Part shown: piece after piece, positions 1 to 35,392 of the stretch
Position numbering within the stretch: position 1 is the stretch's first letter
Layout of the letters: every line of letters starts with the position of its first letter
Assembly: GCA_965637545.1 (NCBI GenBank)
Contig: OZ281496.1
Location: 22,940,001-23,004,000, forward strand
Direction: 5' to 3'
DNA length: 64,000 nucleotides
From: Phallusia mammillata
Taxonomy: Eukaryota
The notes under the pieces: generated by a model
Told to the model about the DNA's origin: nothing
Database searches by the model: none
Seen by the model: the letters and a program-made list of their open reading frames with translations, nothing else
Made by a program: the position numbers and the translations under genes

Positions 1-247
1 GACTCGCATAACGCAATAATATGTTTTATGACCTTTTTAACAAACTAAAACTGACAAAACGAAGTTGCTTGCTTGTATTTGCATTTGCAACAAACATACA
101 TTTTGTTTTTCTCGTGTTTTTTCACTTTGATTTGTAGTGTTAAATCCGGACCATGTCGGTTCGGATATTTTGATTTTTGTGTTTTCATCTTTATGCTCAT
201 AAATAAAGCTTATAAATTTTACTCCATTATTATTTTTTTAATAACAG

Positions 248-3200
248 GACAGAAAGGTTTATTGTTACAAGTACTGGTAGAAAACTGTCGGATTGGCTCT
301 CATCGAAAAGTACCGGTCCATATCACTTCACAGTAAACGGAAAATTGTGGCCTACCTATGATATGACTACAGGCCAACAAAAACGATTCAGGTAACCTAT
401 GTTAAACAGAAGCAAGTGTTTTTTTTACAAATAATAAAGCACACTAAGTCGAGATTTCCAATTATTTCGTAAGGATGAAACATCAATTTCATAAACCTAT
501 TAGGTCTGCCGAGCCCAACCAAATTTTCAAATCCTAGAATTTTGAGAAAAATAAATGTACACTTTGCAGTTTTTAAAACTTTTTAACTGTTATCTGCATT
601 CTCAGACCGCGTGACCATTAGGTACCTAGGTGGTAAACGATCTCCAGTTTGGAAGCCACTTGTATAAAGCAGCCTATAGGCTCTAAATACTTTACAAAGG
701 CTAAATTTATTTCCAATTTTTTTTCGTAGAATGGTTAACGCTGGTGCAAACGCTGTTCTAGAAATGACCATTACAGGACCAAATGCCGCACCTTTGAATG
801 GTGGCTGTCAGTTTCTTGAAATTGCTGTAGACGGTGTTTATTTGGATATGGCTGTTTCACCGAAAAACAAAAAATCCTACATGGTCCCGGCAACGAGAAT
901 AGACTGGTTGGTGGTTTGTGACAAGGCTGGAATATACGAGGTGGGTTTTTTGAAAAAAAAACTCTATTAACAACCATACTTCAACCGGCAAAGGCTGTTT
1001 AAGAAAATAAATGTTGGCTTTAATAATAGGCTTTAGAGAAGTAGTTCTGTACGGTAAACGCTTGAGTAAGTTCTTAAGTGAGCAAGCCTAGAAGTGAACT
1101 TAAAAAAACGTATTATGGTATGTTTAAACATGTGTCCGTTTATTTCCCAATGAAAAGATGCCATCTAAAGCTTCAATCTGTTATATCCGTTTCAGTAACT
1201 CCCCCGTGAAACCTTATTTCTTATGTTAAAAGAAAATCGTGTCTTTTAGGTGCGATCCTTGAACGATCCTCTAGCGTCGGTGGACTCCTTAGGAAACGCC
1301 GAACGCTTCAACGATACATTATTTCTTTTAAATGTTACTGGTCTTGCGACAAGCACCACCTTAATGACAAACCTTCCAAAACGACCTTCATTCGTCGGTG
1401 ATTTCAGAAGTTTGACTCAAGACCAAGTTCATGGCAGACATGTGATTGAAGTGGACCCGAAAAGCACGTTAAACCGACAGAAATTCCTGGGTCAAGGTCA
1501 TCCCAGGTGAGTAAAAGGGTCATTGCGATGTAAAAAAATGCGGTGATAAACATAATTTATTCCTATATTCACCTTGTGTGCGAAGACTATACCTACACAA
1601 CTCAAGTGAATTTGGCTCGCTTTACACAAAAGTCTCTTTTTCTATGCAGGTTTACGTGCGAAGTTAACACAGTCCAAGAATGGTATATCACCAATACAAA
1701 CGATGAATCGTACCATCCCATTCACATCCACATTAATCATTTCCAGGTAAAAAGATCAACGATAGCTGTACAAATTGCATATTTTTTACCACTCCCGAAG
1801 AGGGCATTGGACTTGAACTTGCTGTTTTTCCAGGACAAGTACAAGTCCAATTTCGTTAAGTTTAGTTTTTCGTTAGATCTGATCTGTTGCAAATGTTTTA
1901 GTTCAGTAAAAGATAACAAAGTCTCAGAACTAATTTGTAAATTTGGTCCAAAGTTTGTCGGACTTTAGCTTGTGCAATGAAAAAACGTTGGAAAGCACAC
2001 TGCCCTACTCCAAACCCAACACTTAATTTTTGAAATACCAATCGACGTGAACAAATAACAACGCGTATTTGATGCTATATTTCTCAACATCAAGGTCATA
2101 TCCTATAACAAATACACTGGACCATTTGCGAAGCATAGAAACAATAAACTGACTCTCTACGCTCAAGACGGATCCCGTTGTCACTACCAACCACCAGGAT
2201 ATCTATGTAAGCACTGAAATGTTTAACAAATTTACTTTAACCAAATAAATCTCCTATTGCCACAGCGAGTGATAACGTTGCGTCCGTACCCAACCCGCCT
2301 CTAAGCATGCTCGGCCATGAAAATCGATGGCTCAATGAAACTCTTCCGGGGACAACGGCTTATTCACGACCTGGGGTGTTTCGTGATACAATCCACGTTC
2401 CACCAATGTCCAACATAACCGTAAATATATATTTCTCTTCTTTATTGTAAAAAAACAAAACAAAGTAACATATGTTTAGAAATACAACAGATAAATTTAC
2501 TGTTAACCATATTAAAGGGTGACAAAATATGAATATGACAATAAGACAAAGCTAAGTAAGAATCAGGCTATATACTCCTAAAGGCGACAAATAGTTTAAT
2601 TTTTAGAGATGCGTGTATTGTCGCCATAAAACCCAATAACGTTTTATAATCTAACATATTTGTTTGTACAATTTTATAATTTTTAAAACATTCAATTCCA
2701 AAACGCGAATGCACGGTTTGCAACATAAACGTCATTTTGTTCATTTTCATTGGTTTGCAGATTCGTTTTATGGCACATAAGTACACAGGAAAGGGAGTTG
2801 TTCACTGTCATATTCTTAAGCACGAAGATAAAGGCATGATGTACACGTTCGACATCGTCGATAAACGTACGTTTAGAAAATCCAAATGCTTTTCACTTTG
2901 TTAATTTTATCAATTGAGTTTGTGTCGCGCAGTAAATATTAAAGATATTGTATTTTTTTAATAATATATTTTTATGGGTCAATAACATTTTAATAATTGG
3001 CATATTGGGTCCAAAGAACTTTGTATATGTGCTCTGTTAAATGAACAGCAAGATAAACAATAGTTTTTTGTTTGCAGTAAGCAGCACTGCCATGACTCAC
3101 GTCAAATCAGGAAACGGCTACCCTTCGCAATGCAAACTATGTGACCCTTACCCGTTTAACCAAGTGGTGACCAATTGTCCTCCTGGACAAACTAGCCCAC

Positions 3201-3912
3201 CTCCAGTCGGTGGACAGACTAACCCACCTCCAGTTGGTGCTGGTGGTAGTGGTCCTATTGCGCCGAGTCAACCTGCTTCAAACCCCACAAGCACAACTCA
3301 TAGTCCCGGCAATCAAAATACAGTTGGAAGCAAAGGCGGTTCAGGGTCTCAAGCTACAAATGTTGGCGCTACCGCAGGCCCAAACCAAGGAGGCCAAACT
3401 ACCACAACTGGTGGGGTCGAAAAGGCTTCAGCGAACAAGTAAGTGAACAAACAACGGAAAGCAAATCCTAAGCACGTTGTAAGGAGTTTATGGTAATGGA
3501 AGCATAGTAACAGCAGACTATTGTTATAGCTAACAGAAAATATAATATCGACATCAGGTAAGCTAGGTCATTCACAATACCGTATAACCTTCTGTGAAAC
3601 ATCAGATATTGACTGAATTTAGTCACTAAAATGCAAGAAATTAAATTTAGTCAATACGGCAGTGCAACCAATTTAACGCTGTTTCCAACCGTTTGAAACT
3701 GTATAAACCATTCTGACATTGTGTTATGGCAGTCGTTTTAAATTTATAATAATAATGTAGCCAAAGTCCTGTGTAGCTTATAGCAATTGCAAAAAAACGA
3801 TTCACGTATATTGTTGTTCTTTTTCCTGACAAGTCATGTGTTGTTATTACGTTTCAGATGGAGTTTCATGGTTGCCATAGTAACAGCCTTTATTGCACGT
3901 ATATTCGCCTGA
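248..3912 (+). CDS. Multicopper oxidase (three-domain laccase/CueO-like), paralogue A; 5' part lies upstream of the window; C-terminal Ser/Thr/Pro/Gly stalk and hydrophobic GPI-signal-like tail
   Basis: Exons with GT-AG ends and consistent phase: 248-391, 730-940, 1250-1506, 1650-1746 (HPIHIHINHFQ), 2095-2206, 2266-2420 (FRDTIHVPP), 2761-2866 (HCHILKHEDKGMM, T1/T3 copper site with axial Met), 3078-3438 (Cys motif + stalk), 3858-3912 (K-WSFMVAIVTAFIARIFA*). Five exon lengths (211, 257, 97, 112, 106 nt) are identical to paralogue B. The last exon is less certain than the catalytic exons. Confidence 0.92.
3185..3238 (+). repeat. 27-bp coding tandem repeat (GQT[S/N]PPPVG x2) in the MCO-A stalk
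   Basis: GGACAAACTAGCCCACCTCCAGTCGGT followed directly by GGACAGACTAACCCACCTCCAGTTGGT. Confidence 0.9.
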
Positions 3913-4253
3913 AGGTTGATTTCCTATCAAGGACAGAACAAACACCAAGATCGACGTTCTATTTCGCCACAGTTCAACATTTTTAAAGCACTGTTTAAAT
4001 TTAAAGTTCTCGCTTAAATTTTTGTAGACACGTTCGTTCAAGAAATTATAGCACCAATATTGTCGTACTACATATGTACCTTATCATTTAGCTTCACTGT
4101 ATAGATTTTCCATTATTTAACTGATGATTCTGTATATATTACATTAAAACACCTAAAAACGCCATCTCGTGGGCATGGGTATCACATTGCGCTGTTACAC
4201 AACACTTTTTTCTTCTTTGCGGTGGGTATCGGTTATTTTAGGACAAGGTGATT

Positions 4254-4310
4254 GTAACAACAGTGACTCAGCACAGCAACAGTGACTCAGTATAGCAACG
4301 GTGATTTAGC
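4254..4310. repeat. Short degenerate tandem repeat, ~21-bp unit, about 2.7 copies
   Basis: AACAACAGTGACTCAG / AGCAACAGTGACTCAG / AGCAACGGTGATTTAG in succession, between the two MCO genes. Confidence 0.75.
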
Positions 4311-5508
4311 GTTTGGGTTATTAGGTTACAAAAAATGTCTCATGATCTACAACTGTTTATGACTGTTGCTAAAGCTGTTTATAAAACACAATAATATATT
4401 GCTCAGTACGTCTCAATATTATCGTATAGTTCGTGGCACTAACGTGCTGGTTACAATAAAAGTAGGCAAAATTGAAATCAAATTTCCATGACAAGTTTTC
4501 GACAAAATCGTTAGTCGTTTGCATCTGCACTAAATGTTTAATGATGTTAAGTGAGAAACATAGCTTCCCCAAGAAGCAACATGCTTTATTGTTCAACCTT
4601 TCGGAAAATGCTAATTCCATCATCAATCTAATGCTGTATACATTAAATTTTTAGCAACAAAAGTCAAAAATTACATGTAAAAGGCAACTGTGCAATGGTT
4701 TGGTTAGTTAACCATTGTAAAGAATACTAACGAAGAGATTGAATACGGAATGCATCTGCTTATCTGTGCACTTCATCAACTCACTTTTGTTGCATTTTTA
4801 TGTGCATGATATTTTGTGTTAACTCCACCGTACGGGAAGGTTTTTAGTGTTTTTTTTTTAGTTTCATGTTGTTCAGTTGAGCGCATCAGGCGTTTTTTGA
4901 TGCAAAGGCGCCTTCAGCTTTTTTAGCCGACATTGTAACAAATTGCGATCGGTTGGTCGTCACTCGTTGAGGCAGAGAGGGGCCTATACATACTAAAAAA
5001 AACGTTGGCAAGGCGTGCCGACGTTATTGATATGGTTGACAGAGTGGACTATTCATGCCCGGCGAAAAGCTGAGAAATGAAAGGACTGATTATGCTCGCT
5101 TGGTATCGCATGGTTAATGCTACTTCGTCACTGTCTCCACGAAGCTCGAACAAAAGACTTCAGCAACCTGCTGTAGCAACGCTACATCTGTTTGCATACT
5201 TAAGTTACAGGGAAGACGCTGGTGTCACTGTGCTAAAGGTGAGGCTGCGCATAGCACACTGAGTCATCCATAGTGCTAGTGTTGCTACTAGACCGGTTTC
5301 ATTTTTAAAGGCATTTGCAAAGTGTGTTGGTCTTTATTAGTTAAAGATGTGACTGTTGTACTTCAGGTTATTAAATTTTAAGCTGGGGCATTTTGCATTT
5401 TTGTTATGATATGAAAAGCGGCAATGAATTTTTTGTACAGTTATCGGAACAAACTAGTCCATATATACTAAGCATCTGTAAGAACGGGATCAAGTGTAAC
5501 CTTAAAAT

Positions 5509-8500
5509 ATGATGTTGGTTGTGTTTGTGGTTGCTGTGTTGGTCACTGAAGGAATGAGTCAATCATGTTCCCATACCAGTCCCTGTGCATTCACTGGTAA
5601 GTGATAAAAACGTATTCTACGAAATAAACATTTCCAAGTGTAAACTAACTAACTAACTAACATTAGCAACAGACATCTAGAATTTAGATTAAATGTTTGA
5701 AATATCACTTGCGGTCTACTTGCAGGTGGGGATCCGTTCGTTGCTCCGCCAGAACAAGTGTCGGTGAGCGGAGTACTAAATTACGAATTGACGGTTGATA
5801 TTGCTGACATTACCATTGAGTGGTTGACAACTAAACGACGAGCATGGAATGGTCAACTTGGAGGACCAGTGTTGAGAATGAGAAAAGGAGATCAAGTGAA
5901 CATAAATCTGGTACGACTTGCACGAATAATAATTGCAAGGTTATTTTTTAGCCGAGACATGGCTCGAAATTGACTAAGTCGGTGTAGCTGCAGCGCGTTT
6001 TGGTATCATTCACCAATTGTGCCCTTTACTTTTTTGCGCTCAATAACGTTGTAACGTTGCGCAGCTATTGTTTTTAGTGCTATTGTGTCGCTATGTTTTC
6101 TTTCACCAAGCGAAATAAATCCACTTAACTCAACTCAAGTCACCCAAACCTAGTAAATCTTGAGAGTAAAAATAGCCTATATGAAAGCATTATTTCGATT
6201 AACACGTTTTCCCAGATTTTAACCTTCAACAGCAGGCTATACAAAAACCTTGATATTTTTCTGCGACAAAGGTAAACAATGTGCTGTAACATGACTACAA
6301 TCATTGTTGTACATGCAAACTCTTTAATTGAAAAGGAGCCAACTCTAAAGCGACGGTCTGTTTAACTGTACTGACACACGACAAGTAACAAAATCTTAAA
6401 ACATTTTATCGCAGGTAAACAATCTTATGTTGCCACACAAATTACTTGATGTCAACGACCAACGCCTTCCCAATAGCACCAACCTTCACACCCATGGCCT
6501 TCACATTTCCAGTCAAGTAAGTTTTGATAACTCTATGTAAAGTATTTAGAACTGTACAAAAAAGCAAAAAAACTGTACCGTTAAGACATGTAACTGTCTT
6601 TGCAGTAGGTACTTTTAGAAACTAACATTACCACTATAACACAATCAATTTCGATACACATATTTCCATTAAGTTCAATAACTTAGAAAATGATAATTTA
6701 ATCCCTTGGTTTTTTAATAAATAAAAGCAATAAAAGCTTATTACAACATGTGCCTTCCACTAAGACAAAATTGGAGGTCAAATGGAACAGTCACCTCAAA
6801 CGCCACAGTGTTATTCGTTACATAAACGCTATAGGACAAAGTACATTCATACAAGTAATACAATACGATGCACCCCCAACAAGATTGGTGCAAATCGCAA
6901 CAGTTTTTAAAACCAGACTCGATGCCCCTGTAATTACTTTCATGCTATTTATAAAGCTTATGTCGGAAATGGTGCAATTATTTAACCTTAATTAGTTTTT
7001 TGGACACAACGCGTTTTGGTTTCGATTACTTATGCATCGCAAAAACTAATTAGCCCCCCAGAAAAGTGTGCAATTACTGCCCGAAGAAATGCAAACCCAG
7101 TACAGCGGTATTTTCATATAGATTCATGTTAATTCATTGTTTACTTGATGCATTTAAAGGAAAAACAGTTATTACGGAGTGCTTACTTTATTTTCTTTAT
7201 CTTTTTGTGTTCACATTCTAAACAAAATTTCACAAAACAAAACAAATAGATAGGGTCAGCTCTTTAAAACAGCCAATTGTGGTTCCAGCTGAACCCTTTT
7301 TGTTTCAAGCTTATTTACCCGTATGTTACCTGTCTTATTATTATACTTGGGCGCTGAAACAAATAAAATTTATAGATCGATTGATTGCGTAAAAAGAAAT
7401 ATTTTACATGTAAAATTCAACCAAAAAAAGTATTTATACTTCTGTATAGTCAAAACATTTTACAAATGATTCTACCAGAAACAACTTTCTCGATTGACAC
7501 GTTTGTATTGCAGGAGCCACAGGACAACGTATTTGTGCATTTAGAGCCAGGAGAAACATACATGTATCGGTACCAAATCGATGCTGAAAATGAACCGGGA
7601 ACTTTATGGTACCATCCCCATTTGCACGGCTCCACCCTCTTCCAGGTTAGCCCTAGTATTCTGACTTAATGCCGTTGCAATAAATTTTTAAGTCAAACAC
7701 CGATGTGCCGAGACATAATGTAAAATACTGTTCTTCGGTAGTGTGTTTCTGCTTTTTCAGGCGACGTTATTTAGTTGTAGTGTAAAATCAAGGCGGCATG
7801 TGTTACCACTGTTTTTGGTTCTGTTGCAATAACGGACTGCCAGTACCCAAATTAAACTTGTATTTATAAAGATATAAAAAAACGATAAAAGCAGCGCAGA
7901 TATATACAAGCAGTCGCGACAGACCCACCGCTGAACACCAACTCCAACTGCGAACTTCTCAACCGCGTGGGGCCACGTCTCCTCGGCAATTCGTTACAGC
8001 GAAACGACATAGAAATATATTATGACGTCATATGATGATGACAAAATAAAAACATGCATAAATGATTATATTGGATACAGCTGTGAATACACTTGTTAAC
8101 CGCGTGTTACTTGTTTGACTTTGACAATTTCAAAAAAATAGTCATGAGAAATTTTGCAAAGATTTCACTATTTTCCAATCAACATTTGTCAAAACTGACT
8201 GATGTATTCTGACAAAGGTGCATGGTGGAATGGCGGGAATGATTGTGGTTGAAGACCCAGCAGACTCAACAACTCCAGCTCACATACAAGCTGTGTCGTG
8301 TCCGAACAACTGCGATAAGGAAGTTCGACTTCTTTTCCAGCCGGTTCTCCAATACAGTCAGCGGGGACCCAGAGCGTTTGCCACAATCCAAGATGATATT
8401 CAAGACAATGCCCTATTTCGGTAAGTGCCTGAAATACTTGCTAAACCTAGCATATCGGGTTCGTACATAATGCGTAATATTATTGACATATGCTGTATGT

Positions 8501-11500
8501 TTGTATACATAGCTACCTAGCGAGACCTGGGAGGTTGTAAAGTATATGTATTACAACAATGATTTCTGTATTTAACACTAATCAAATTTTAAAATTAGCC
8601 ATAAAAGTTCGGTAGCTATGGTGGGTTTGCATGAAATAGGTCGTTTACGTATATTTTTAAACTTATTAACCCTCAAAAAGTTAAATGGTTCCAAAAGTCT
8701 GAAACCAAACAACATAATTCAAACAACTTGCATCACTTGCAGGCACAACAGTGAAATTCTTGACGCCGGAGGAAACTTGGAAGATTGGCTTACAGCTAAT
8801 GTCAATCATTTCACAACGAACGGTCAATTGTGGCCAGTACTTACCATACCCGCTGGGGAAGTCAGGAGATTTCGGTATTTGTTTGCTTATATTCACGTAT
8901 TTTTTTAATGCTTTAAAGTTTAAGCACACAAACAAGACTAACATAAACACCATCCTAAAATTAATCCGCACTGCAAGGACCGAAAACAGCTTCCACGGAA
9001 AAATCCTTTCATTTTTCTCTATGATGCCTAGGCTATTTTTCTGCTTGTTACAATGTTTTGGTTGTTGCTGCTGTTTTAAGCTGTTTTTTTATTCATGTCC
9101 TGAAATTTTCATGTTCCTTTATTTTTTTATTAACATGTCCCTTTATCCTGCTATCTAATAGTTTAAACTTTAAAGCTCACCATGGCTCTGAACTTTTTGG
9201 GTTAAACGCAAAATATGAGAAGTAAAAATGCATTTTAGTATGGTGAACGCCGGCGGTGGTGCCTTTCTCGAGTTGCACATAGCAGATAACAGCGACCAAC
9301 CAACAACTGGTTGTACTGTGAAGCAAATCTCTTTGGATGGTGTTTATTTTGATTCGGCAGTGGAACTTGGTGCCGGCGGGAGAACTTTCCTTGTGCCGTC
9401 TGGTAAAGCTGACTGGCTAGTGGTGTGCAACACTCCAGGGACATATCACGTAAGTTTGAATGTTTAAATACTTATATGAGAACTCATATTAAACGAAGTC
9501 TTCTCAGTACTGATAGGTGGCACAAAGAGCACAAAAATTCTGCAAAAATGCTTGTTAGGGCAATATAGGTAGGGGTGAGGTTGCACAATAAAATTCTTAC
9601 TAATGTTCTTAACCCTATCCCTGTCCAAATGCTAATTTAAATTACTGCGATGTTTTACATCAACTATCGGTATTTAGCAATATTGAAAATTTCCACTTAT
9701 TCGGTGAAAAGAAAGTAAACTTACATAGAGAAAAAAAGTTTAATTTAGGAAAATACACAAACACACGAAAAATAATTTAAAATGCCCCATGTCAATTCAA
9801 CGTCCTTCAAAAATGAAGACAAGAAATGAGAAATTTTGCCGAAAGGAACCCTGGCGGCCTATAATGCGACCTTCTATAGGTTTCAAGATTTTGTAACATT
9901 GTTGAAGCAACCATGAAACATTTTTTTCAGCTGAGGTCAACCCCAGACAATGCTGACGAAATGTCGACTGGAAACATCGAGCACTATAACGCTCGTCTTC
10001 TAACACTTACAGTAACAGGTTCAACCACCACGACAACAACTATTGCGGATAATCTGCCAGCGAAAGCCACATTCAACAGAGATTTCTCGACTCTGTCCGA
10101 TGATGAGGTGTTTGGACGTTTTGTGATAGAAGCCAGCCCTGGAACGCGCCTGAACAGGGAAAGATTTTCTTCCAACACCGACTACAGGTAAATGCTTTGT
10201 CGACAAACATATATATTATTTTGTTTTTGTTTGGTAACTACAGTAAATAACCTAATCAAAATATATTCTGTTTGATAAATCTTTCTGTGAAGAACTCAAG
10301 TCACAATCTTGTATTTTAGGGACCATTAGTTTCCGTAAAAAGCAAAAATTTCAATGCTTGATTAGAAAAGTGTTTAAAATACAATAAAATTGATCTGTTT
10401 CTGATCTTTAAATCAACCATCTGGTAACTGTTCAGCCCCAACACAGACATTGACGCCGCCTCCTGTCGCCTCCGGCATTACAAACAAAACTCGTTGTCGG
10501 GTGCTTTGCAGTTAAAAAAAATAAATTGTAAATAACTTTTAAAGATTTAAAATGGAGGCAGAAACGGTCCAGGAACTTTACTTTGTCAACAGCGACTCCC
10601 AAGACGGCCATCCAATACATATACACATCAACCATTTTCAGGTACATCGCAGTTAACCGAAACAACTGTTAGCTGCGTTTAAGGCTACCGTTATTGTGGT
10701 TAAATAACTACTTTATCCTAAGTGATATAAATTTAGCCCTTTAAAGAGTTAATATTTAGAAATGCTAAATAGAAAATAGTTGAATGAACAATCATTAACG
10801 ATAATCTCAAACATTTTAAAACTTGATTTTCTACAGATTATTAGCTACAACCCTTACACTGGACCAATCGCTGTGAATAATCGCCAAAGCTATGTGTTCT
10901 TTAATCAAGCAGGAGACCGCTGTTTTCGACAACATTCGACGTATGATGGTAGGTCTTTTATTTTTACCTTCAGTTTTACCATGCCTACAAATTATGTTAT
11001 TTTTAAATTACAGCCTACCACCATTCAAATAATTACATTAAAAAAACATTATGTTTGTAAATGTTAGATTTTTTAGACATATACATTTTGCTTAAAAACA
11101 GTAGGCCTATTAGCATATAAATCAACCTGATCTGCTTAATTCAAATTTGTTGCTACATGGTTCTTTAGGTCCTTATCTTCCAAACATGGTTAAACTTTAA
11201 ATAGAATCTACTCGTAAATCATTTTGTTAATTAAATACATAAGTTTAGGTAGCAATACTCGCAATTAAAACAAAAAGCGGGAATCACCCAGTCCGTTGCT
11301 GGGTGGATGAAGACTAATGAGCCTTATTGCAATGGATGAAAGTTCAGAAAAAAACAACACTTAGTCGTTCATCCTAATTACATATGTGCATAAGTTTGGG
11401 TAGCTTACAATTACATATGTGCTACTTCAGCCGTAAAAATATGCTAAGCTGTTATATCTAATTTCAGGTTAAATGTTTGGAAAATAAAATGTGTTTGAAA

Positions 11501-13245
11501 ATATATGTAAAAGAGTCTAACATTGCAATTGTTTCAAAAAGAAAATTTCACGGGTAATCTGCCAAACAACGCTCTGCAGTTCTTGGGACACGACACACGT
11601 TGGGCGGCAGGTGGAACTGGGACCAGAGGATATGCAACAGCAAAACAGTTTCACGATGTCTTGCTTGTGCCACCACTAGCTAATATAACTGTGAGTTGTT
11701 TCGTTTGGTTGTTAATTCAACATCTTGTAAAACAGTAATTTTTTGTCGAATCTAGAATTCCTAGTCAAAATGACAAACGCAACAACGTAAAACTTGTAGT
11801 ACGCGGCTGCTGTAGTAAAAAAAATAACTTAGTCGAACAAACGTATTATTTTAATCGAAAAACAACGAATTTAAGAGACATATTTTGATGACGTATATAA
11901 AGCCTGTAATCCTCCCAAAAACACTCTTAAATTGTCCCCAAATAGTATAAAATGCTCACATTTTAAGCAAAACAAGTATAAATATATTTGGGCTTGTGGG
12001 TTTGCGCGCAGACCAGTTGACTACAGCAACAAAGTTAAACGGCAAGAGTAAAATTGATTAGATACCAAACTTCCACACCAGTTTGAAAGAGCCCTGTAGC
12101 ACCATTTACCATTTACATTATTTGCTTGTATTAACAGGCCAGGTTCCTAACACACACATACACTGGAGAGGTGGTTGTTCACTGTCACTTGCTTAACCAT
12201 GAAGATTCTGGTATGATGATGACCCTAGAGATAGTGGCTCAAGGTATGATTAGCGAAAGTGAATTCAACCATTATGAAGTTTCTGATTAAAAATAGACAC
12301 CTGGGCAAGTTTCAGCAAAAACTGGGTTCATAATATGACATTGGAGACACTATGCAGTGATTTCAGTCATGAAAAATACCAACTGTAAGTTATAAGTTTT
12401 CCACAGTTATGTCGTCAAGCATTTAAGACCAGTAAGAACAATTTACTTGTGGCAACGTAAACGTGTTAATACACAACACCACAAAGATTGCAGACCAATT
12501 TCTATACTTAAAACTCAGTAAGTACTATGCCTACACCTAACCAGGTGGTCATTTTTACAGGGGCCGATCTGACAGCTAACACCACGTCTGGCAACGCTTA
12601 CCCCGGACAGTGCGCGGAGTGCGACCCATTCCCGTTTAATACTGCCGTTTGCGATGCCGACGGTTCTACCCTGACAACCACGACCACAGTTGCGGGAACA
12701 TCTACAACAGCAACAACAACAGGCGGATCGGATACCATCAAAACAACAGGTACGACTAATATTGGAAAATAATCTGGTGGTTTATATTCCACCAGAGTGT
12801 GTCAGAGAGCTAGATTTGGAAATTAGGCAGACCTGATATAGTCGTGACCCAGAAGTAAAGTATAACATCGGATGTTTTAACAAAGGCTCATAAAATTTCT
12901 AATAAAGATTGCCCAAACAATGAGTGAAATATGCGTGTAAAAGGTGCAATCTAAACGAAAGTAAAATCATAAATCAAAATATTTCCATGTAACAGAGAAA
13001 TGGAGTTTATGAACGCCTAAAGTTACCAATATAGCGTTTTTCCATCACTGCTTACTGCGTGTTTTTTACCAGGCATTTTTGCATGCAATCTTAAAAAGGC
13101 GACTTAACTAAACAATGTACTACGTTATTTCTGGAATCAATACCGTTTAAAGTAAAAAAAGTTTACATAATATATTCCATTTTTAGGTGCACTGATGTTT
13201 TTTGCCGTTCTGTTGTCGTGGTTTTCGCATAGTCACGTGTGCTAA
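5509..13245 (+). CDS. Multicopper oxidase (three-domain laccase/CueO-like), paralogue B, complete, 673 aa; signal peptide plus predicted GPI-anchor tail
   Basis: 14 exons: 5509-5596 (signal peptide MMLVVFVVAVLVTEG), 5726-5910, 6415-6516 (TNLHTHGLH), 7514-7645 (WYHPHLHG), 8218-8420, 8743-8874, 9239-9449, 9931-10187, 10545-10641 (HPIHIHINHFQ), 10837-10948, 11542-11690, 12138-12243 (HCHLLNHEDSGMM), 12561-12749 (Cys motif + Thr-rich stalk), 13187-13245 (GALMFFAVLLSWFSHSHVC*). The exons sum to 2022 nt in one open frame, and all four copper-binding motifs are intact. Confidence 0.94.
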
Positions 13246-13995
13246 GTGAAAGAAACAAAGATGACCTGCAGCACTGTGATCTTTTATTGTGTACAGTTTG
13301 CTTCAAATAGTTTTTTTTTTTGACATAGTTGTTTTGTTTTGGTTTTGAAAGCGTTGTTTCAGCTTGTTGGTATATATAATACCTGTTCTTGACGCATTTT
13401 TCAACGCCGAATACAGGTTTAAGTATTGCAAAGGATTACTCTTAGTACAAATACAGTTGAAGGGTTTTCAAAATCGTAAAAAGTTTTGTGTAAAATGTTT
13501 TTAAAAACGGATTAAAAAGCTTTTATCACACATTTTTGTTCAGAAGTAAGAATTTCGAAAATAGGAAAAAAAAGTCAATTTAAGGAGTGTACACATAAAG
13601 TAACAAATCAAACAAAAATGGCAAATCGAAAATGATTACGAAATTAACACTGGTTCTGTAAAGTAATGAAGTAGAACAGGCTTACATCTTTTCAACACTT
13701 TCTGAATGTAGTCATTAAATAACATTACACCAGTACATTTCTTAAATAAGCCGCACATCAAAGTGATGGTGAATTTGTCGCCAGCAAAGGCAAAGACGCC
13801 TGTTTGCATTTTATGGTGCTATAAAAGCGTTGCTTTTGTTTTTGCTCAAAGCATTAAAACTCACATTTAATGTAAATGTGATGCGTTAGAACAGTAAAAA
13901 CGGCCCTTTGATACAAAGGAGTTTCTCTTTTGACACCCCACAAACAACCCCTAGCGGCCATTCTTGGGCCGCCCTTGGTGGCAAATCCGAAGTTA

Positions 13996-16763
13996 CTAAT
14001 CCAGCCAATGCGGACGTTCGTAACCGAAACGGTCAAAGTCAGTTTCATATTTGTAATAAAGTTGTAATGCAAGATTTTTTGGTACAGACTTAAACATCTT
14101 TTCCACCACGTCCAACTGCGTTCGGCTGTTTCTGTTTGGAAAGAACACTTTTCGATCTTTCACAGTTATGTTCAGTTTCTCTTCCAAGTAGCTGATATCG
14201 GACACCAACGATTCAAACTTGACCACGACGTCGTACTGAAATGTGCAAGGATGACAGCTCAATTCAAAGTCTATCCAATGCGAATCGGTCGGGTAGGGAC
14301 TTTTAACTAGAAAATTGACAAAGTCCTCAAAGGTAGCTGCACCTCCGTTTTCATGGTTTCGTTCAGCTGGGTTATGTCGCATTTCTCTGTATTTCTTACT
14401 GATTCGATGCGACATTGGCTTATAGAAGTTTGGAGTAGAACCTGGACCGTTCAGAGCCATTTTGTCGTTGTATGCCGAAACAATTCGTGCGAACGGATGC
14501 CGGACTGTGATAATCTATTTAGACAAAACAGCATAGCGGTAAAACAAAGTGTTCTGGATTCTTGTGACACATATACCGATGTTTAAAGCTATCTACTACA
14601 TATTAAACACAAATGCTTTTGCCACCATCAGTAATACGATACGGCTTTATCAGTGGTTATCAAAAGATACGCGTTTTCAAAGGTACTGATTGTTTTTTAG
14701 AACTAGCCTATGTGCCTTAAATTAAACTAGCAACAATTTAAAATCTTTTGTAGTCGAAAGTTTAAAGGCGATTCTTTGGTCATTCATCCTTAGAGGGTCA
14801 ATATGTTAACGAATGGCGAAACTAGAATCCTTTTAAAACACTGAACACGGACCTATTCTTGAGTATAATGAGGAATACAACCCCAATAGACGTAAAAATC
14901 AAATTGTTTTATTGTTCAGAATTTTGTGCAAATGCCAACCTGATGATCTACCGATACGTTACTTTATACCTCGCATAAACGATTAGAAAAGACATGCCTT
15001 TTGTTGCGTCTGTTTGGGCCGTTATATTCCTCATTGAGTGTTTGTTTGTGGTACAATGTTCCCAGCTATGCCTCCACTGAATATTTTTTCCAATAGTTTG
15101 GTTGTTACACACATCGTCGTTATTCAATGTGTAAGAACCATGGACAAAGTTGACTCAAACACAATAATAATATGTTACTATACAATAATGGTGGTATTGT
15201 AGCGACCTTCATTGCTTTTTGCCAGTTGTTAAACGATGAGCTGGTAAAAGAAGAAATTCTAAGATTCTGGTTGCCAAGGTTCATAACTTCCTGCCCCACT
15301 ATCCTGTTTGCAAAGTAATCCTCGGGTTTAAAGTATTTCTCCATCACCATGAGAGCTTGCAGCCAACTGGAGCTTCCGCATTTTTGAATGTCGCAAACAG
15401 CAAACTTTGAAAAGACGAAAAATGTGCTTTAAAGTCATGTAAACCAATACAAAAAGGTAGGTATGGCAATAATTGCTGAGCAATTGCAATAGTAAAAGCC
15501 TATGCTTCGTTGCGTCAACTTTTGAAAATTAGCAGGCCTGTCTGGGAGTTCCTGTGTTAGTAGATTTTCCATACAAACACTAACTTTTGCAAAATAACAT
15601 ACAAAATAATCCAGAAGAGCGGAAGAAATCAGCATCATTAAAATCTTTCATTTTCGAAAGAGAAAAAATATAATTTCGCCTATGTGGATGGCATCGTCAG
15701 TTTCCGTCTTGTTAACTTGTACAAAGTAAGTGATGTTTTAAAACTAAGGTTTGAACAAACAACGCATTGTGCTTTTGCGATACATCGTCGTTGCGGAAAA
15801 GCAAGATTACAACTCTACAGTCGTTTATGTTTTTGTGCAAACGTTTTTGGATACCAAACAAACCTTATGCTCAGTATAACACGAGTAGTTTGACACATTG
15901 AAACAGACCTTTACTCCTACCTTATATGTTTTCGAGTACAGTGCATTGCTGTTCACTGCCATTTTATTGAGTCGAGTTTTGCTTCGTAGACAAGATCTTC
16001 TTAATGCAGCAATCCGTTCTTTATGGAGAATATCCATGACATAAATAAACTTGGTTCTCTCTCTACGCCTACGTTGCATGTTTGTGGGTGTCGTTTCCGT
16101 AACAGCGTTGGTACTAACTTTCGTGAATGTGACAACTCGAGGCTTTGGTATCAGCGTCAAACAACAAATATAAAACAGGTTATTAATAAAGGACGTAAAA
16201 CTGTGTTTCACTAAACTTCGTAAACTGTTATGTCTAATTGTGGTCAGAAACATATTTGGTGAAGCATGGCTTTTCAGTATACTTTCAACAAACTGGAGTG
16301 TTGTAAAGGTCTACAAAACGACGTTGACAAAGATATTTTGAGCGGTTAAAGGACTTTTGTATCGGCTCCAATTTAGGATACGTGTACTGTCATACAGCAA
16401 GGTTACTTGTGTGAGCAAACGCCCCAACACAGCAACAAAACGTTCGAAAGTTGTCAACACAAGCTCAAAGTAGACACAGGATGATTTAAACCAAAATTGA
16501 CAATCATGAAGGCCTTACAAATTCAAACCAGTTTCTAAACTGTGCCGAAGGCAATTTACCATCCGTGTATGGTTACGTGGTTATGATTAATGCACAACCA
16601 GTTTTTCTTAAGTCCATCAAACTATATTTTGCGGTTTACGCAATTTTGGTCTCACCTGTATATTTGTTTTGCGTTCCAAACACACGTTGTACACAAAGAA
16701 GCACAACATAACACCTATAGCAATTCCGAGACACATTTGTCGGGATTTATTCAAAGCAGACAT
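13996..16763 (-). CDS. Carbohydrate sulfotransferase, Sulfotransfer_2 family (CHST8-14 / HNK-1ST / chondroitin-dermatan 4-O-sulfotransferase-like), type II membrane protein, 348 aa
   Basis: Four exons, all phase 0: 16763-16656 (MSALNKSRQMCLGIAIGVMLCFFVYNVCLERKTNIQ, TM anchor), 16142-15921 (stem), 15404-15207 (FAVCDIQKCGSSSW, 5'-PSB-like), 14514-13996 (VRHPFARIVSAYNDK 3'-PB motif; DSHW..SCHPC...YDVVVKFE; LYYKYETDFDRFGY). The donor after exon 3 (AAG|GTCGCT) is weak but restores the motif. The exact CHST orthologue cannot be assigned by eye. Confidence 0.9.

Positions 16764-32985: not shown

Positions 32986-35392
<2,407 letters not shown>

What the first reader, a model, noticed from the sequence alone, without database searches (positions are those of the whole stretch)
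248..13245. Tandem pair of bacterial-type multicopper oxidases domesticated as intron-rich, secreted/cell-surface animal enzymes
Seen: two paralogous three-domain MCO genes with conserved exon sizes. B reads TNLHTHGLHISSQEPQDNVFVHLEPGETYMYRYQIDAENEPGTLWYHPHLHGSTLFQVHGGMAGMIVVED in domain 1, then HPIHIHINHFQ and HCHLLNHEDSGMM, so T1, T2 and T3 ligands are complete with an axial Met. Known: the WYHPHxHG, HPxHxH..xFQ and HCH..xHEDxGMM style matches the bacterial Thermus laccase/McoC/CueO class. It differs from six-domain ceruloplasmin/hephaestin and from insect-type laccases (HWHG, WYHSH). Inference: an old horizontal acquisition or a patchily retained lineage, intronised, duplicated and re-targeted to the extracellular surface. 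Candidate roles are tunic/cuticle phenolic cross-linking (DOPA/tunichrome tanning) or metal oxidation.
Basis: partly seen in the sequence, partly recalled or inferred. Interest (0 to 1): 0.75.

Follow-up and report, generated by a model that had tools for sequence, protein, structure and literature searches.

The report
Tandem chordate-type multicopper oxidase genes
Two neighbouring, intron-rich, transcribed genes encode secreted, probably membrane-anchored copper oxidases of an unstudied family that among named animals occurs only in sea squirts and lancelets. The family looks bacterial in style, but its nearest relatives on the tree are enzymes of single-celled eukaryotes, and its substrate is unknown.

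Summary
Gene B (5509-13245, + strand) has 14 GT..AG exons and encodes 673 aa. It carries all four copper-ligand motifs, an axial Met, a signal peptide, a Thr-rich stalk and a hydrophobic C-terminal tail. Gene A (248-3912) is a 42%-identical paralogue cut off by the window start; five of its exon sizes equal B's. Contigs from four runs lack all ten introns laid (exons 4-14), so B is transcribed and spliced.

By sequence and predicted fold the nearest solved structures are Thermus laccase, McoC and CueO. No curated bacterial family threshold is reached.

The family is not tunicate-specific. Branchiostoma has orthologues that share 5 of 13 intron positions with B. Chordates form one clade (100/100), split amphioxus | tunicates. 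A 100/100 branch separates all 24 named bacterial sequences from chordates plus chytrid, stramenopile and other protist sequences. No other named animal appeared in three profile searches.

So the gene was already present in the chordate stem. Whether it came by transfer or by descent with many losses is unresolved, and direct bacterial transfer into tunicates is excluded. All chordate members share a ~55-residue insertion in domain 3.

The substrate is unknown. The scan noted the same family before, on another piece of this genome (s1-392396).

The parts
248..3912 (+). Gene A, 3' part only (498 aa; the 5' exons lie upstream of the window). Exons: 248-391, 730-940, 1250-1506, 1650-1746, 2095-2206, 2266-2420, 2761-2866, 3078-3438, 3858-3912 (stop TGA 3910-3912).
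   Evidence: all exons have AG..GT borders, the frame is continuous, and A is 42% identical to B. Sizes 211/257/97/112/106 equal B's. Not checked with reads.
1650..1746 (+). Gene A exon carrying HPIHIH (domain-3 T1/T2/T3 His motif).
2761..2866 (+). Gene A exon carrying HCHILKHEDKGMM (T3-His, T1-Cys, T3-His, T1-His, axial Met).
3078..3438 (+). Gene A exon: conserved Cys pair (QCKLCDPYPFN), then a Pro/Gly/Ser/Thr-rich stalk.
3858..3912 (+). Gene A last exon: 17-residue hydrophobic C-terminal tail (WSFMVAIVTAFIARIFA) running to the stop. Looks like a GPI-attachment signal.
   Evidence: best 15-aa Kyte-Doolittle window 2.3, ending at the C-terminus.
5509..5596 (+). Gene B exon 1: start codon and signal peptide (MMLVVFVVAVLV...), then the conserved Cys pair C..SPC.
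   Evidence: N-terminal 10-aa hydropathy 3.7. Intron position and phase shared with Ciona and amphioxus.
5726..5910 (+). Gene B exon 2 (185 nt): start of cupredoxin domain 1.
   Evidence: The same 185-nt exon occurs in Ciona P0077 and amphioxus P0089. Weak Cu-oxidase_3 hit.
6415..6516 (+). Gene B exon 3, with HTHG (6487-6498; T2 and T3 His ligands).
7514..7645 (+). Gene B exon 4, with WYHPHLHG (7607-7630; two T3 His ligands).
   Evidence: Cu-oxidase_3, E 1.7e-6. Junction to exon 5 seen in a spliced contig.
8218..8420 (+). Gene B exon 5: end of domain 1 and the linker with the conserved SCPNNC.
   Evidence: S, C, P, C invariant in the tunicate alignment.
8743..8874 (+). Gene B exon 6 (domain 2 start).
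9239..9449 (+). Gene B exon 7 (domain 2 core, 211 nt).
   Evidence: Used as the query; many exon-sized database fragments start at its first residue.
9931..10187 (+). Gene B exon 8 (domain 2/3 linker, 257 nt).
10545..10641 (+). Gene B exon 9, with HPIHIH (10609-10626; T1, T2 and T3 His ligands).
   Evidence: (Cu-oxidase_2).
10837..10948 (+). Gene B exon 10: first half of the chordate-specific ~55-residue insertion in domain 3 (ISYNPYTGP...GDRC...).
11542..11690 (+). Gene B exon 11: second half of the insertion (...LGHDTRW...) and return to the cupredoxin core (VPPLANIT).
   Evidence: The 10948->11542 junction is seen in three runs.
12138..12243 (+). Gene B exon 12, with HCHLLNHEDSGMM (12180-12218; T3-His, T1-Cys, T3-His, T1-His, axial Met).
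   Evidence: (Cu-oxidase_2, E 3.7e-6).
12561..12749 (+). Gene B exon 13: conserved Cys pair (QCAECDPFPFN), then a Thr-rich stalk. A 6-nt length allele sits at 12711.
   Evidence: table 4.
13187..13245 (+). Gene B exon 14: hydrophobic C-terminal tail (ALMFFAVLLSWF SHSHVC) and stop codon (13243-13245).

Best explanation
**What they are.** A and B are two tandem paralogues of a chordate family of extracellular three-domain multicopper oxidases. Among named animals the family is found only in tunicates and amphioxus. It was already an intron-bearing nuclear gene before those two lineages split.

**How they most likely work.**
- Inferred from sequence features: a signal peptide takes the protein into the secretory pathway, and conserved Cys pairs form disulfides.
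- Inferred: a Thr/Pro/Gly-rich stalk and a short hydrophobic C-terminal tail (most likely a GPI-attachment signal) hold the enzyme on the outer face of the cell.
- Shown only as intact ligand motifs: the T1 copper (His, Cys, His, axial Met) takes single electrons from a substrate. It passes them through the Cys-His path of the HCH motif to the T2/T3 trinuclear cluster between domains 1 and 3, where O2 is reduced to water.
- A ~55-residue insertion between the HxxHxH and HCH motifs of domain 3, shared by all chordate members, is a family-specific addition of unknown role.

**Substrate.** Not known. I lean to a metal ion at the cell surface, Fe(II) or Cu(I), at about 45%. A catechol or phenol (laccase-like) substrate is at about 35%, and anything else about 20%.

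**Origin.** By sequence and fold the family belongs to the CotA/CueO/Thermus-laccase class. Its nearest relatives on the tree are MCOs of microbial eukaryotes, not bacteria. How the chordate stem came to have it (transfer, or descent with many losses) is unresolved.
For: **Gene structure and expression**
- The gene models are complete and in frame, with all four ligand motifs and an axial Met in B.
- Contigs of four runs from one study lack all ten introns laid, at GT..AG borders.

**Fold and class**
- Pfam Cu-oxidase_3 and Cu-oxidase_2 hit single exons of B and the closest Ciona orthologue P0075.
- The AlphaFold model of P0075 has pLDDT 88 and pTM 0.86, with residues 621-674 disordered and a terminal helix.
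- Foldseek best matches are Thermus laccase (TM 0.82-0.85 by target), Sulfurimonas MCO, McoC, CotA, CueO and bilirubin oxidase.
- The profile search of PDB sequences gives the same order: Thermus 141 bits, McoC 125, CueO ~87, Fet3 66, fungal laccase ~62.

**Distribution**
- Named animal hits are only Ciona, Clavelina, Styela and four Branchiostoma taxa.
- Scores then drop sharply, from 563 to 318 bits and from 427 to 291 bits.
- The reverse search with a protist/chytrid profile recovers only Branchiostoma among animals.

**Tree** (69 rows, LG+C20+F+G4 PMSF)
- Chordates 100/100; tunicates 98/94.
- 24 named bacteria plus 5 metagenome rows are separated from the eukaryote side by a 100/100 branch.
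- Two metagenome rows on the eukaryote side lie on contigs with eukaryotic neighbour genes.

**Age and family features**
- 5 of B's 13 intron positions and phases are shared with amphioxus, and 9 with Ciona in the wider alignment.
- The HxxHxH-to-HCH distance is 105-137 residues in all 18 chordate rows. It is 48-66 in named bacteria and named protists.
- A signal peptide is present in nearly all family members. Most have a hydrophobic stretch ending 0-14 residues from the C-terminus, two have a TM helix plus tail, and some have none.
Against: - No enzyme activity, copper content, localisation or tissue of expression was tested.
- The runs are labelled RNA only as a guess. Splicing is inferred from intron-less contigs.
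- No GPI or signal-peptide predictor was available. Both calls rest on hydropathy and inspection, and B's hydrophobic tail is short (about 12 residues).
- There is no Met-rich segment like that of CueO or the Thermus hairpin. Ferroxidase acidic residues were not evaluated, so the lean to a metal substrate rests on analogy.
- The homologue searches score only the 8000 candidates that share most 5-residue words and list 120 rows.
- The tree is unrooted and includes no insect-type, fungal or plant MCOs.
Confidence: 0.8

Rival explanations
1. Origin rival 1: one horizontal transfer into the stem chordate, from a microbial eukaryote or an unsampled lineage. This was followed by intron gain, the domain-3 insertion, membrane anchoring, expansion in tunicates and loss in vertebrates.
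For: - It needs only one gain and one loss.
- No named animal outside tunicates and Branchiostoma appeared in three profile searches.
- None of the 12 chytrid or 38 Chrysoparadoxa intron positions coincides exactly with a chordate intron.
- The chordate stem branch is long, about 0.5 changes per column.
Against: - Chordates are sister to the sampled microbial eukaryotes as a whole (94/87). They are not nested inside any donor group.
- Absence from other animals is not proven by word-limited searches.
- Intron turnover could erase shared positions.
Confidence: 0.4
2. Origin rival 2: an old eukaryotic (possibly opisthokont) MCO inherited vertically. It was kept in chytrids and in invertebrate chordates and lost many times elsewhere in animals and fungi.
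For: - All named eukaryotic sequences lie on one side of a 100/100 branch.
- Chytrids, which are opisthokonts, are among the best non-chordate hits.
- The AU test does not reject chordates plus the chytrid clade (p = 0.0745).
Against: - It requires independent losses in vertebrates, ambulacrarians, protostomes, cnidarians, sponges, unicellular holozoans and most fungi.
- No intron position is shared with the chytrid gene.
- The free tree does not join chordates to chytrids.
Confidence: 0.4
3. One reading: a bacterial MCO gene transferred into tunicates, or directly from bacteria into chordates, and then domesticated.
For: - Nearest solved structures are bacterial.
- NCBIfam's best model is CueO.
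- RefSeq names such as 'CueO-like' and 'mco-like'.
Against: - Amphioxus orthologues with shared introns exclude a tunicate-specific event.
- A 100/100 branch separates all named bacteria from chordates plus microbial eukaryotes.
- The best bacterial loci are 25-34% identical and come from many phyla.
- The CueO model scores 112 bits against a cut-off of 525.
- PDB holds few protist MCOs, so 'nearest structure is bacterial' reflects what has been solved.
Confidence: 0.1
4. Function rival: a laccase-like phenol/catechol oxidase used for cross-linking extracellular matrix (tunic, cuticle or mucus) or oxidising tunichrome-type DOPA/TOPA peptides.
For: - The protein is extracellular, sits on a stalk, and has an intact T1 site with axial Met.
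- The family is expanded in tunicates, with at least nine Ciona clusters.
- Phenol oxidase activity of unknown molecular basis is reported in ascidian tunic and morula cells (PMC9395347, introduction, read).
Against: - Amphioxus, which has no tunic, has the family too.
- The closest solved relatives are mainly metallo-oxidases (the title of 3zx1).
- Nothing was tested.
Confidence: 0.35
5. The genes are decaying pseudogenes, or come from a contaminant.
For: Gene A is incomplete in the window.
Against: - Both reading frames are open across every exon, with all ligands intact.
- Transcripts are spliced.
- GT..AG introns are shared with Ciona and amphioxus.
- The genes are flanked by animal genes in the same window: a Sulfotransfer_2 ORF and SoxB1.
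- A's truncation is only the window edge.
Confidence: 0.03

Closest known systems
Thermus thermophilus HB27 laccase / Tth-MCO (PDB 2XU9, 6W2K)
   Same: Best match of the family profile among solved structures (141 bits). Also the best fold match of the Ciona orthologue model (TM 0.82-0.85 by target). Same three-cupredoxin architecture and the same WYHPH.HG, HP.H.H and HCH...HED.GMM motif style.
   Different: - About 23% identical.
- About 440 aa against 673 aa.
- No signal-peptide/stalk/anchor architecture.
- No ~55-residue domain-3 insertion.
- The Thermus enzyme has a Met-rich hairpin over T1, which the chordate proteins lack.
- It lies across a 100/100 branch on the bacterial side if it groups with the sampled bacteria. 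It was not itself in the tree.
Campylobacter jejuni McoC (3ZX1) and E. coli CueO (1KV7)
   Same: Next-best sequence and fold matches. CueO is the best NCBIfam model. The HCH...HED.GMM motif is nearly identical.
   Different: - The CueO equivalog scores 102-112 bits against a curated cut-off of 525.
- No Met-rich helix.
- Periplasmic bacterial copper-resistance enzymes, against eukaryotic secretory-pathway proteins.
RefSeq models in Ciona intestinalis, Clavelina lepadiformis, Styela clava and Branchiostoma spp. ('multicopper oxidase mco-like', 'laccase-like', 'bilirubin oxidase-like', 'CueO-like')
   Same: True family members. B is 47% identical to Ciona XP_018668543 over the full length and 52% to a Clavelina isoform. 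It is 60% identical to Ciona F6YQV7 over the trimmed tree columns. Exon structure is shared. All carry the domain-3 insertion.
   Different: These names are automatic. No functional or evolutionary study of them was found in the paper library. The window's species is none of these.
MCOs of chytrids (Synchytrium, Chytriomyces, Blyttiomyces), stramenopiles (Ectocarpus, Chrysoparadoxa, Paraphysomonas) and other protists
   Same: Nearest non-chordate relatives on the tree. They lie on the same side of the 100/100 bacteria/eukaryote branch and are intron-bearing eukaryotic genes.
   Different: - 25-32% identical.
- They lack the domain-3 insertion.
- No shared intron positions.
- Several are fused to other domains: GSDH, peroxiredoxin, Hint.
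Membrane-anchored eukaryotic ferroxidases: yeast Fet3p, hephaestin, GPI-anchored ceruloplasmin. Also GPI-anchored plant SKU5.
   Same: Working analogy only (established knowledge): an MCO ectodomain held on the outer membrane face by a C-terminal TM helix or a GPI anchor.
   Different: Different MCO lineages. Fet3 scores 66 bits against 141 for Thermus. Hephaestin and ceruloplasmin have six domains. SKU5 lacks most copper ligands.

Membership tests
Three-domain multicopper oxidase (Pfam Cu-oxidase_3 / Cu-oxidase / Cu-oxidase_2) | Three cupredoxin domains in one chain | tested here: met
   Exons of B hit Cu-oxidase_3 and Cu-oxidase_2. Orthologues carry PF07732, PF07731 and, in some, PF00394. 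The AF2 model of the Ciona orthologue superposes on three-domain MCOs over 570-620 columns. B itself was not folded, because a spliced protein cannot be given by reference.
Three-domain multicopper oxidase | Ten His and one Cys in the motifs HxHG, HxH, HxxHxH and HCHxxxH | tested here: met
   B has HTHG, HPH (in WYHPHLHG), HPIHIH and HCHLLNH. For A only the two domain-3 motifs lie in the window.
Three-domain multicopper oxidase | Oxidase activity with four-electron reduction of O2 | not testable with these tools
   Needs recombinant protein.
CueO (NCBIfam NF008205 equivalog) | Score at or above the curated cut-off (525 bits) | tested here: not met
   102-112 bits for Ciona and amphioxus orthologues, matching domain 1 only.
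CueO / Thermus-type cuprous oxidase | Met-rich segment covering the T1 site | tested here: not met
   The domain-3 insertion of B contains no Met, and no Met-rich stretch occurs in the 673 aa (by inspection).
Insect-type laccase / MCO | HWHG and WYHSH motif style and grouping with arthropod MCOs | tested here: not met
   B has HTHG and WYHPH. No arthropod-named protein appears among the 120 best hits of either chordate profile. No insect sequence was placed in the tree.
Six-domain ceruloplasmin / hephaestin | Six cupredoxin domains, about 1000-1150 aa | tested here: not met
   673 aa and three domains.
GPI-anchored protein | N-terminal signal peptide plus a C-terminal hydrophobic tail preceded by small residues, with no cytoplasmic domain | tested here: inconclusive
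   Hydropathy only. A has a 17-residue tail running to the C-terminus. B has about 12 hydrophobic residues followed by six more. No dedicated predictor was available. Some paralogues instead have a TM helix plus a 43-51 residue tail.
Horizontally acquired gene (standard criteria) | Recipient sequences nested inside a donor clade with support | tested here: not met
   Chordates are sister to, not inside, the sampled microbial eukaryotes. They are separated from bacteria by a 100/100 branch.
Horizontally acquired gene (standard criteria) | Absence from the recipient's other relatives | tested here: inconclusive
   Only tunicate and Branchiostoma names appear in three profile searches. The searches are word-limited, and most proteins in the collection are unnamed.
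Horizontally acquired gene (standard criteria) | Not a contaminant: introns, host flanks, expression | tested here: met
   13 GT..AG introns, spliced contigs, and animal neighbour genes.

The most novel reading that the evidence does not exclude
The family is a chordate innovation founded by one ancient transfer of a CotA/CueO-class oxidase gene from a microbial eukaryote into the stem chordate. It was then remodelled (introns, a 55-residue domain-3 insertion, a membrane anchor), expanded in tunicates and lost in vertebrates. It would supply an as yet unassigned extracellular metal- or catechol-oxidising activity of invertebrate chordates. That activity may be linked to ascidian iron/vanadium handling or to tunichrome chemistry.
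Probability: 0.3. Interest if true: 0.6.

Novelty: new member of a known kind. Interest (0 to 1): 0.4.

Why it matters
Invertebrate chordates carry a multi-gene family of extracellular copper oxidases that vertebrates lack. No study of it was found in the library searched.

The family is a clean test case for telling ancient gene transfer from differential loss near the base of the chordates. A recent Ciona HGT screen dropped any protein with a deuterostome among its top five BLAST hits, and Branchiostoma floridae was in its database (PMC13390645, section 6). It would therefore have missed this family by design.

Functionally, the family is a concrete candidate for unexplained oxidase chemistry at ascidian cell surfaces. 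The enzymology itself is ordinary MCO chemistry, and the orthologues are already auto-annotated. The finding is therefore of moderate interest, not high.

Tried and rejected
1. **Exon 7 against 1.84 billion representatives.** Only 48 hits came back. The full-length ones were all ascidian, and amphioxus was not reached. This gave entry points but is not a test of distribution.
2. **Organisms behind the unnamed Logan transcripts.** The look-ups return only run accessions, so the organisms stay unknown. On the tree, all unnamed rows inside the chordate clade fall within the tunicate clade.
3. **P0095 as a possible non-chordate animal intermediate.** It scored 470 bits to the tunicate profile. It is a 1149-aa tandem double MCO without the chordate insertion, and its best BLAST hit is a EukProt protist sequence. 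It sits outside the chordate clade.
4. **ESM Atlas look-alikes of the amphioxus protein.** These gave only generic MCO clusters (SKU5, arthropod, bacterial) at scores of 0.9 or below, which is uninformative.
5. **Intron positions as evidence of shared eukaryotic ancestry.** Zero exact matches with the chytrid or ochrophyte genes. This is neutral to mildly against vertical descent.
6. **First AU test (chordates plus three named chytrids, p = 0.007).** I discarded it as unfair, because it forced a metagenome sister (P0111) out of the chytrid clade. The fair version gives p = 0.0745.
7. **Literature searches.** I searched for tunicate or amphioxus MCOs, Ciona laccase, Ciona ferroxidase and algal-to-animal transfer. 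No description of this family was found. Tuphoxin (PMC9395347) was discussed there among phenol oxidases and haemocyanins, not MCOs, so I set it aside.
8. **B as a whole protein.** A spliced protein has no reference, so B could not be given to the database, fold or family tools. Its exons and its closest Ciona orthologue were used instead.

Full report
**1. What is in the sequence**

Translating the + strand of 1-13,600 in three frames shows two series of open segments with multicopper oxidase (MCO) motifs. I joined them at canonical splice sites.

Gene B has 14 exons: 5509-5596, 5726-5910, 6415-6516, 7514-7645, 8218-8420, 8743-8874, 9239-9449, 9931-10187, 10545-10641, 10837-10948, 11542-11690, 12138-12243, 12561-12749 and 13187-13245. 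Every intron is GT..AG.

The protein has these parts, in order:
- a hydrophobic signal peptide;
- the ligand motifs HTHG, WYHPHLHG, HPIHIH and HCHLLNHEDSGMM, that is ten His, one Cys and an axial Met;
- a Cys pair followed by a Thr-rich stretch;
- a short hydrophobic tail at the very C-terminus.

Gene A occupies 248-3912 with nine exons and 498 aa. It is cut off by the window start, so only domains 2-3, the stalk and the tail are present. Its domain-3 motifs are intact.

A and B are 42% identical. Exon sizes 211, 257, 97, 112 and 106 nt are the same in both. There is no third copy in the window.

**2. Expression**

One study has four runs whose contigs hold 10-18% of the sampled words of the locus, roughly the exon share. 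Laid on 7450-13300, these contigs skip exactly the ten introns between exons 4 and 14. This includes the one junction I could not settle from sequence alone (10948->11542). Two runs carry a 6-nt length allele in the Thr-rich part.

The runs are labelled RNA only as a guess. Contigs that lack ten GT..AG introns are nonetheless best read as mRNA.

**3. Relatives**

Exon 7 searched against 1.84 billion cluster representatives found only 48 clusters. The full-length ones are RefSeq or UniProt models of Clavelina lepadiformis, Ciona intestinalis and Styela clava. Many others are exon-sized fragments that begin at the first residue of the exon.

Identity of B to named orthologues:
- 47% to Ciona XP_018668543 over the full length;
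- 52% to a Clavelina isoform;
- 60% to Ciona F6YQV7 over the trimmed tree columns.

A profile of seven tunicate proteins and a profile of amphioxus plus unnamed transcripts gave the same picture. The only named animals were tunicates and Branchiostoma: lanceolatum, floridae, belcheri and hybrids with japonicum, with at least three paralogues. Scores then fall from 563 to 318 bits. Below the drop come:
- chytrid fungi (Synchytrium, Chytriomyces, Siphonaria);
- stramenopiles (Ectocarpus, Chrysoparadoxa, Paraphysomonas);
- Perkinsus and MMETSP/EukProt protists;
- bacteria, labelled FtsP/CotA-like (Nitrospira, Oscillatoria, Streptomyces).

A reverse search with a chytrid/protist profile again named only Branchiostoma among animals. 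In one genome per bacterial and archaeal species, the best loci are 25-34% identical and come from many phyla.

**4. Tree**

A quick tree of 103 rows and a careful tree of 69 rows agree. The careful tree used 524 columns, LG+C20+F+G4 by PMSF and 1000 ultrafast bootstraps, and included 20 extra named bacterial sequences. Its results are:
- chordates are one clade (100/100);
- within them, tunicates are one clade (98/94), with the amphioxus rows beside them (the three amphioxus rows scored 94 SH-aLRT in the interim quick tree of this set; seven rows scored 96);
- all unnamed transcripts of the chordate clade fall inside the tunicates;
- a 100/100 branch separates 24 named bacterial rows plus 5 metagenome rows from 19 chordate rows, 11 named microbial-eukaryote rows and 10 metagenome rows.

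I checked two of those ten metagenome rows. Both lie on contigs with eukaryotic neighbour genes: GYF, PP2C, TIR and MAPEG for one; ARC6, p25-alpha, PAC4, Sec1 and TCP1 for the other.

The microbial eukaryotes form the sister group of chordates (94/87). The root was not inferred. An AU test does not reject chordates plus the chytrid clade (p = 0.0745).

A and B sit in a well-supported clade of seven rows (100/98) with Ciona F6YQV7, 'mco-like' and LOC100183735 and two Clavelina proteins. Inside that clade the order is unresolved. I therefore cannot say whether the A/B duplication predates the split from Ciona.

**5. Age of the gene in chordates**

I mapped exons of a Ciona paralogue and an amphioxus orthologue on their genomic loci and compared intron positions on protein alignments.
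- Ciona shares nine of B's thirteen intron positions and phases in both alignments. Two more lie two columns away in the same phase.
- Amphioxus shares five: after residues 29 (phase 1), 91 (phase 0), 169 (phase 0), 236 (phase 2) and 351 (phase 0) of B.

The gene was therefore already an intron-bearing nuclear gene before cephalochordates and tunicates diverged. The chytrid gene (12 introns) and the Chrysoparadoxa gene (38 introns) share no exact position with chordates.

**6. Family-specific features**

- The distance from HxxHxH to HCH is 105-137 residues in all 18 chordate rows. It is 48-66 in named bacteria and named protists. This is a ~55-residue insertion with a conserved Cys, encoded in B by exon 10 and most of exon 11.
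- Chordate members share an N-terminal C..SPC pair, an SCPxxC pair in the domain 1-2 linker and a C-terminal Cys pair.
- Nearly all have a signal peptide. Most have a hydrophobic stretch ending 0-14 residues from the C-terminus. Two have a TM helix with a 43-51 residue tail, and some have none.

**7. Class and fold**

- The tunicate profile matches solved structures in this order: Thermus laccase (141 bits), McoC (125), bilirubin oxidase and CueO (~87-96), CotA (68), Fet3 (66), fungal laccases (~62).
- The AlphaFold model of the closest Ciona orthologue is confident (pLDDT 88, pTM 0.86). Its tail from residue 621 is disordered and ends in a terminal helix.
- Foldseek gives the same neighbours as the sequence search.
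- No curated NCBIfam equivalog is reached; CueO scores 112 bits against a cut-off of 525.

It is not orthology.

**8. Mechanism and function**

What is shown is an intact ligand set and a secretory/anchor architecture. The rest follows from established MCO chemistry. The substrate is oxidised at T1, electrons pass through the Cys-His path of the HCH motif to the trinuclear cluster, and O2 is reduced to water.

The substrate is unknown.
- For a metal ion: the nearest solved enzymes are metallo-oxidases, and other membrane-held eukaryotic MCOs (Fet3p, hephaestin, GPI-ceruloplasmin) are ferroxidases. That is an analogy, not a test.
- Against a CueO-like cuprous oxidase: there is no Met-rich segment.
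- For a catechol/phenol role: it fits ascidian tunic and blood-cell phenol oxidase activity (PMC9395347).
- Against a tunic role as ancestral: amphioxus has the family and has no tunic.

**9. Origin**

A tunicate-specific bacterial transfer is excluded. Two options remain and the data do not decide between them.
- A single gain in the stem chordate, followed by loss in vertebrates. This is parsimonious, but no donor clade is identified.
- Vertical descent from an early eukaryote or opisthokont, with many losses. All eukaryotes lie on one side of the tree and the chytrid grouping is not rejected, but many losses are needed and no introns are shared.

**10. Literature and earlier notes**

Six full-text searches found no description of this family. 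Two HGT papers on Ciona and Styela do not mention it. The 2026 Ciona HGT screen excluded proteins with a deuterostome hit, including Branchiostoma, among the top five, so it would not have listed it.

The scan's own notes record a four-gene cluster of the same family on another piece of this genome. Its follow-up reading agrees with mine (s1-392396). That is not independent evidence. It does show that the genome holds at least six genes of the family.

**Verdict**

These are new members of a known enzyme kind, belonging to an unstudied chordate-restricted family. Interest is moderate.

Noticed in passing
window 12711 (gene B exon 13): A 6-nt length difference in the Thr-rich stalk is present in the spliced contigs of two of four runs and absent in the other two. 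It is probably an allele of a low-complexity coding repeat.
   Followed up: no
Relatives P0020, P0074, P0076 (Ciona), P0078 (Clavelina), P0082, P0084, P0086 (unnamed): One tunicate paralogue clade has HCHLQGDAD... in place of HCHxxxHED. The second T1 histidine ligand is replaced by Asp while the Cys, the T3 histidines and the Met are kept. This is a possibly altered or lost type-1 copper site. It is not the case in A or B.
   Followed up: partly
window 13996-14460, - strand: A 154-aa ORF matches the C-terminal half of Pfam Sulfotransfer_2 (E 4e-17). It is probably the last exon of a carbohydrate sulfotransferase gene, tail to tail with gene B.
   Followed up: partly
window 34481-35392, + strand: A 303-aa ORF with an HMG box and a SOXp domain: a SoxB-type gene. 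The ORF as listed starts inside the HMG box, so the true start lies upstream.
   Followed up: partly
P0095 (Logan transcript, 1149 aa): An unidentified eukaryote encodes two MCO units in tandem, followed by a TM helix and a short tail. The first unit has all ligands, and the second has lost most of them. An EGF-like Cys-rich linker lies between the units.
   Followed up: partly
Relatives; locus L003 9481-9843: Many microbial relatives are fusions: MCO plus peroxiredoxin/AhpC-TSA (PF08534, PF00578), MCO plus GSDH (Ectocarpus; also a GSDH ORF just upstream in L003), and MCO plus Hint (PF01079).
   Followed up: no
L004 23614-23621 (Branchiostoma lanceolatum gene): My exact-match exon map needs an 8-nt micro-exon to reproduce the RefSeq protein. 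This may be an artefact of the annotation or of my mapping.
   Followed up: no
L005 21155-27134 (Ciona locus of P0077): The Ciona paralogue closest to B is followed by two cytochrome P450 genes. No such genes follow B in the window, so local synteny is not obviously kept.
   Followed up: no
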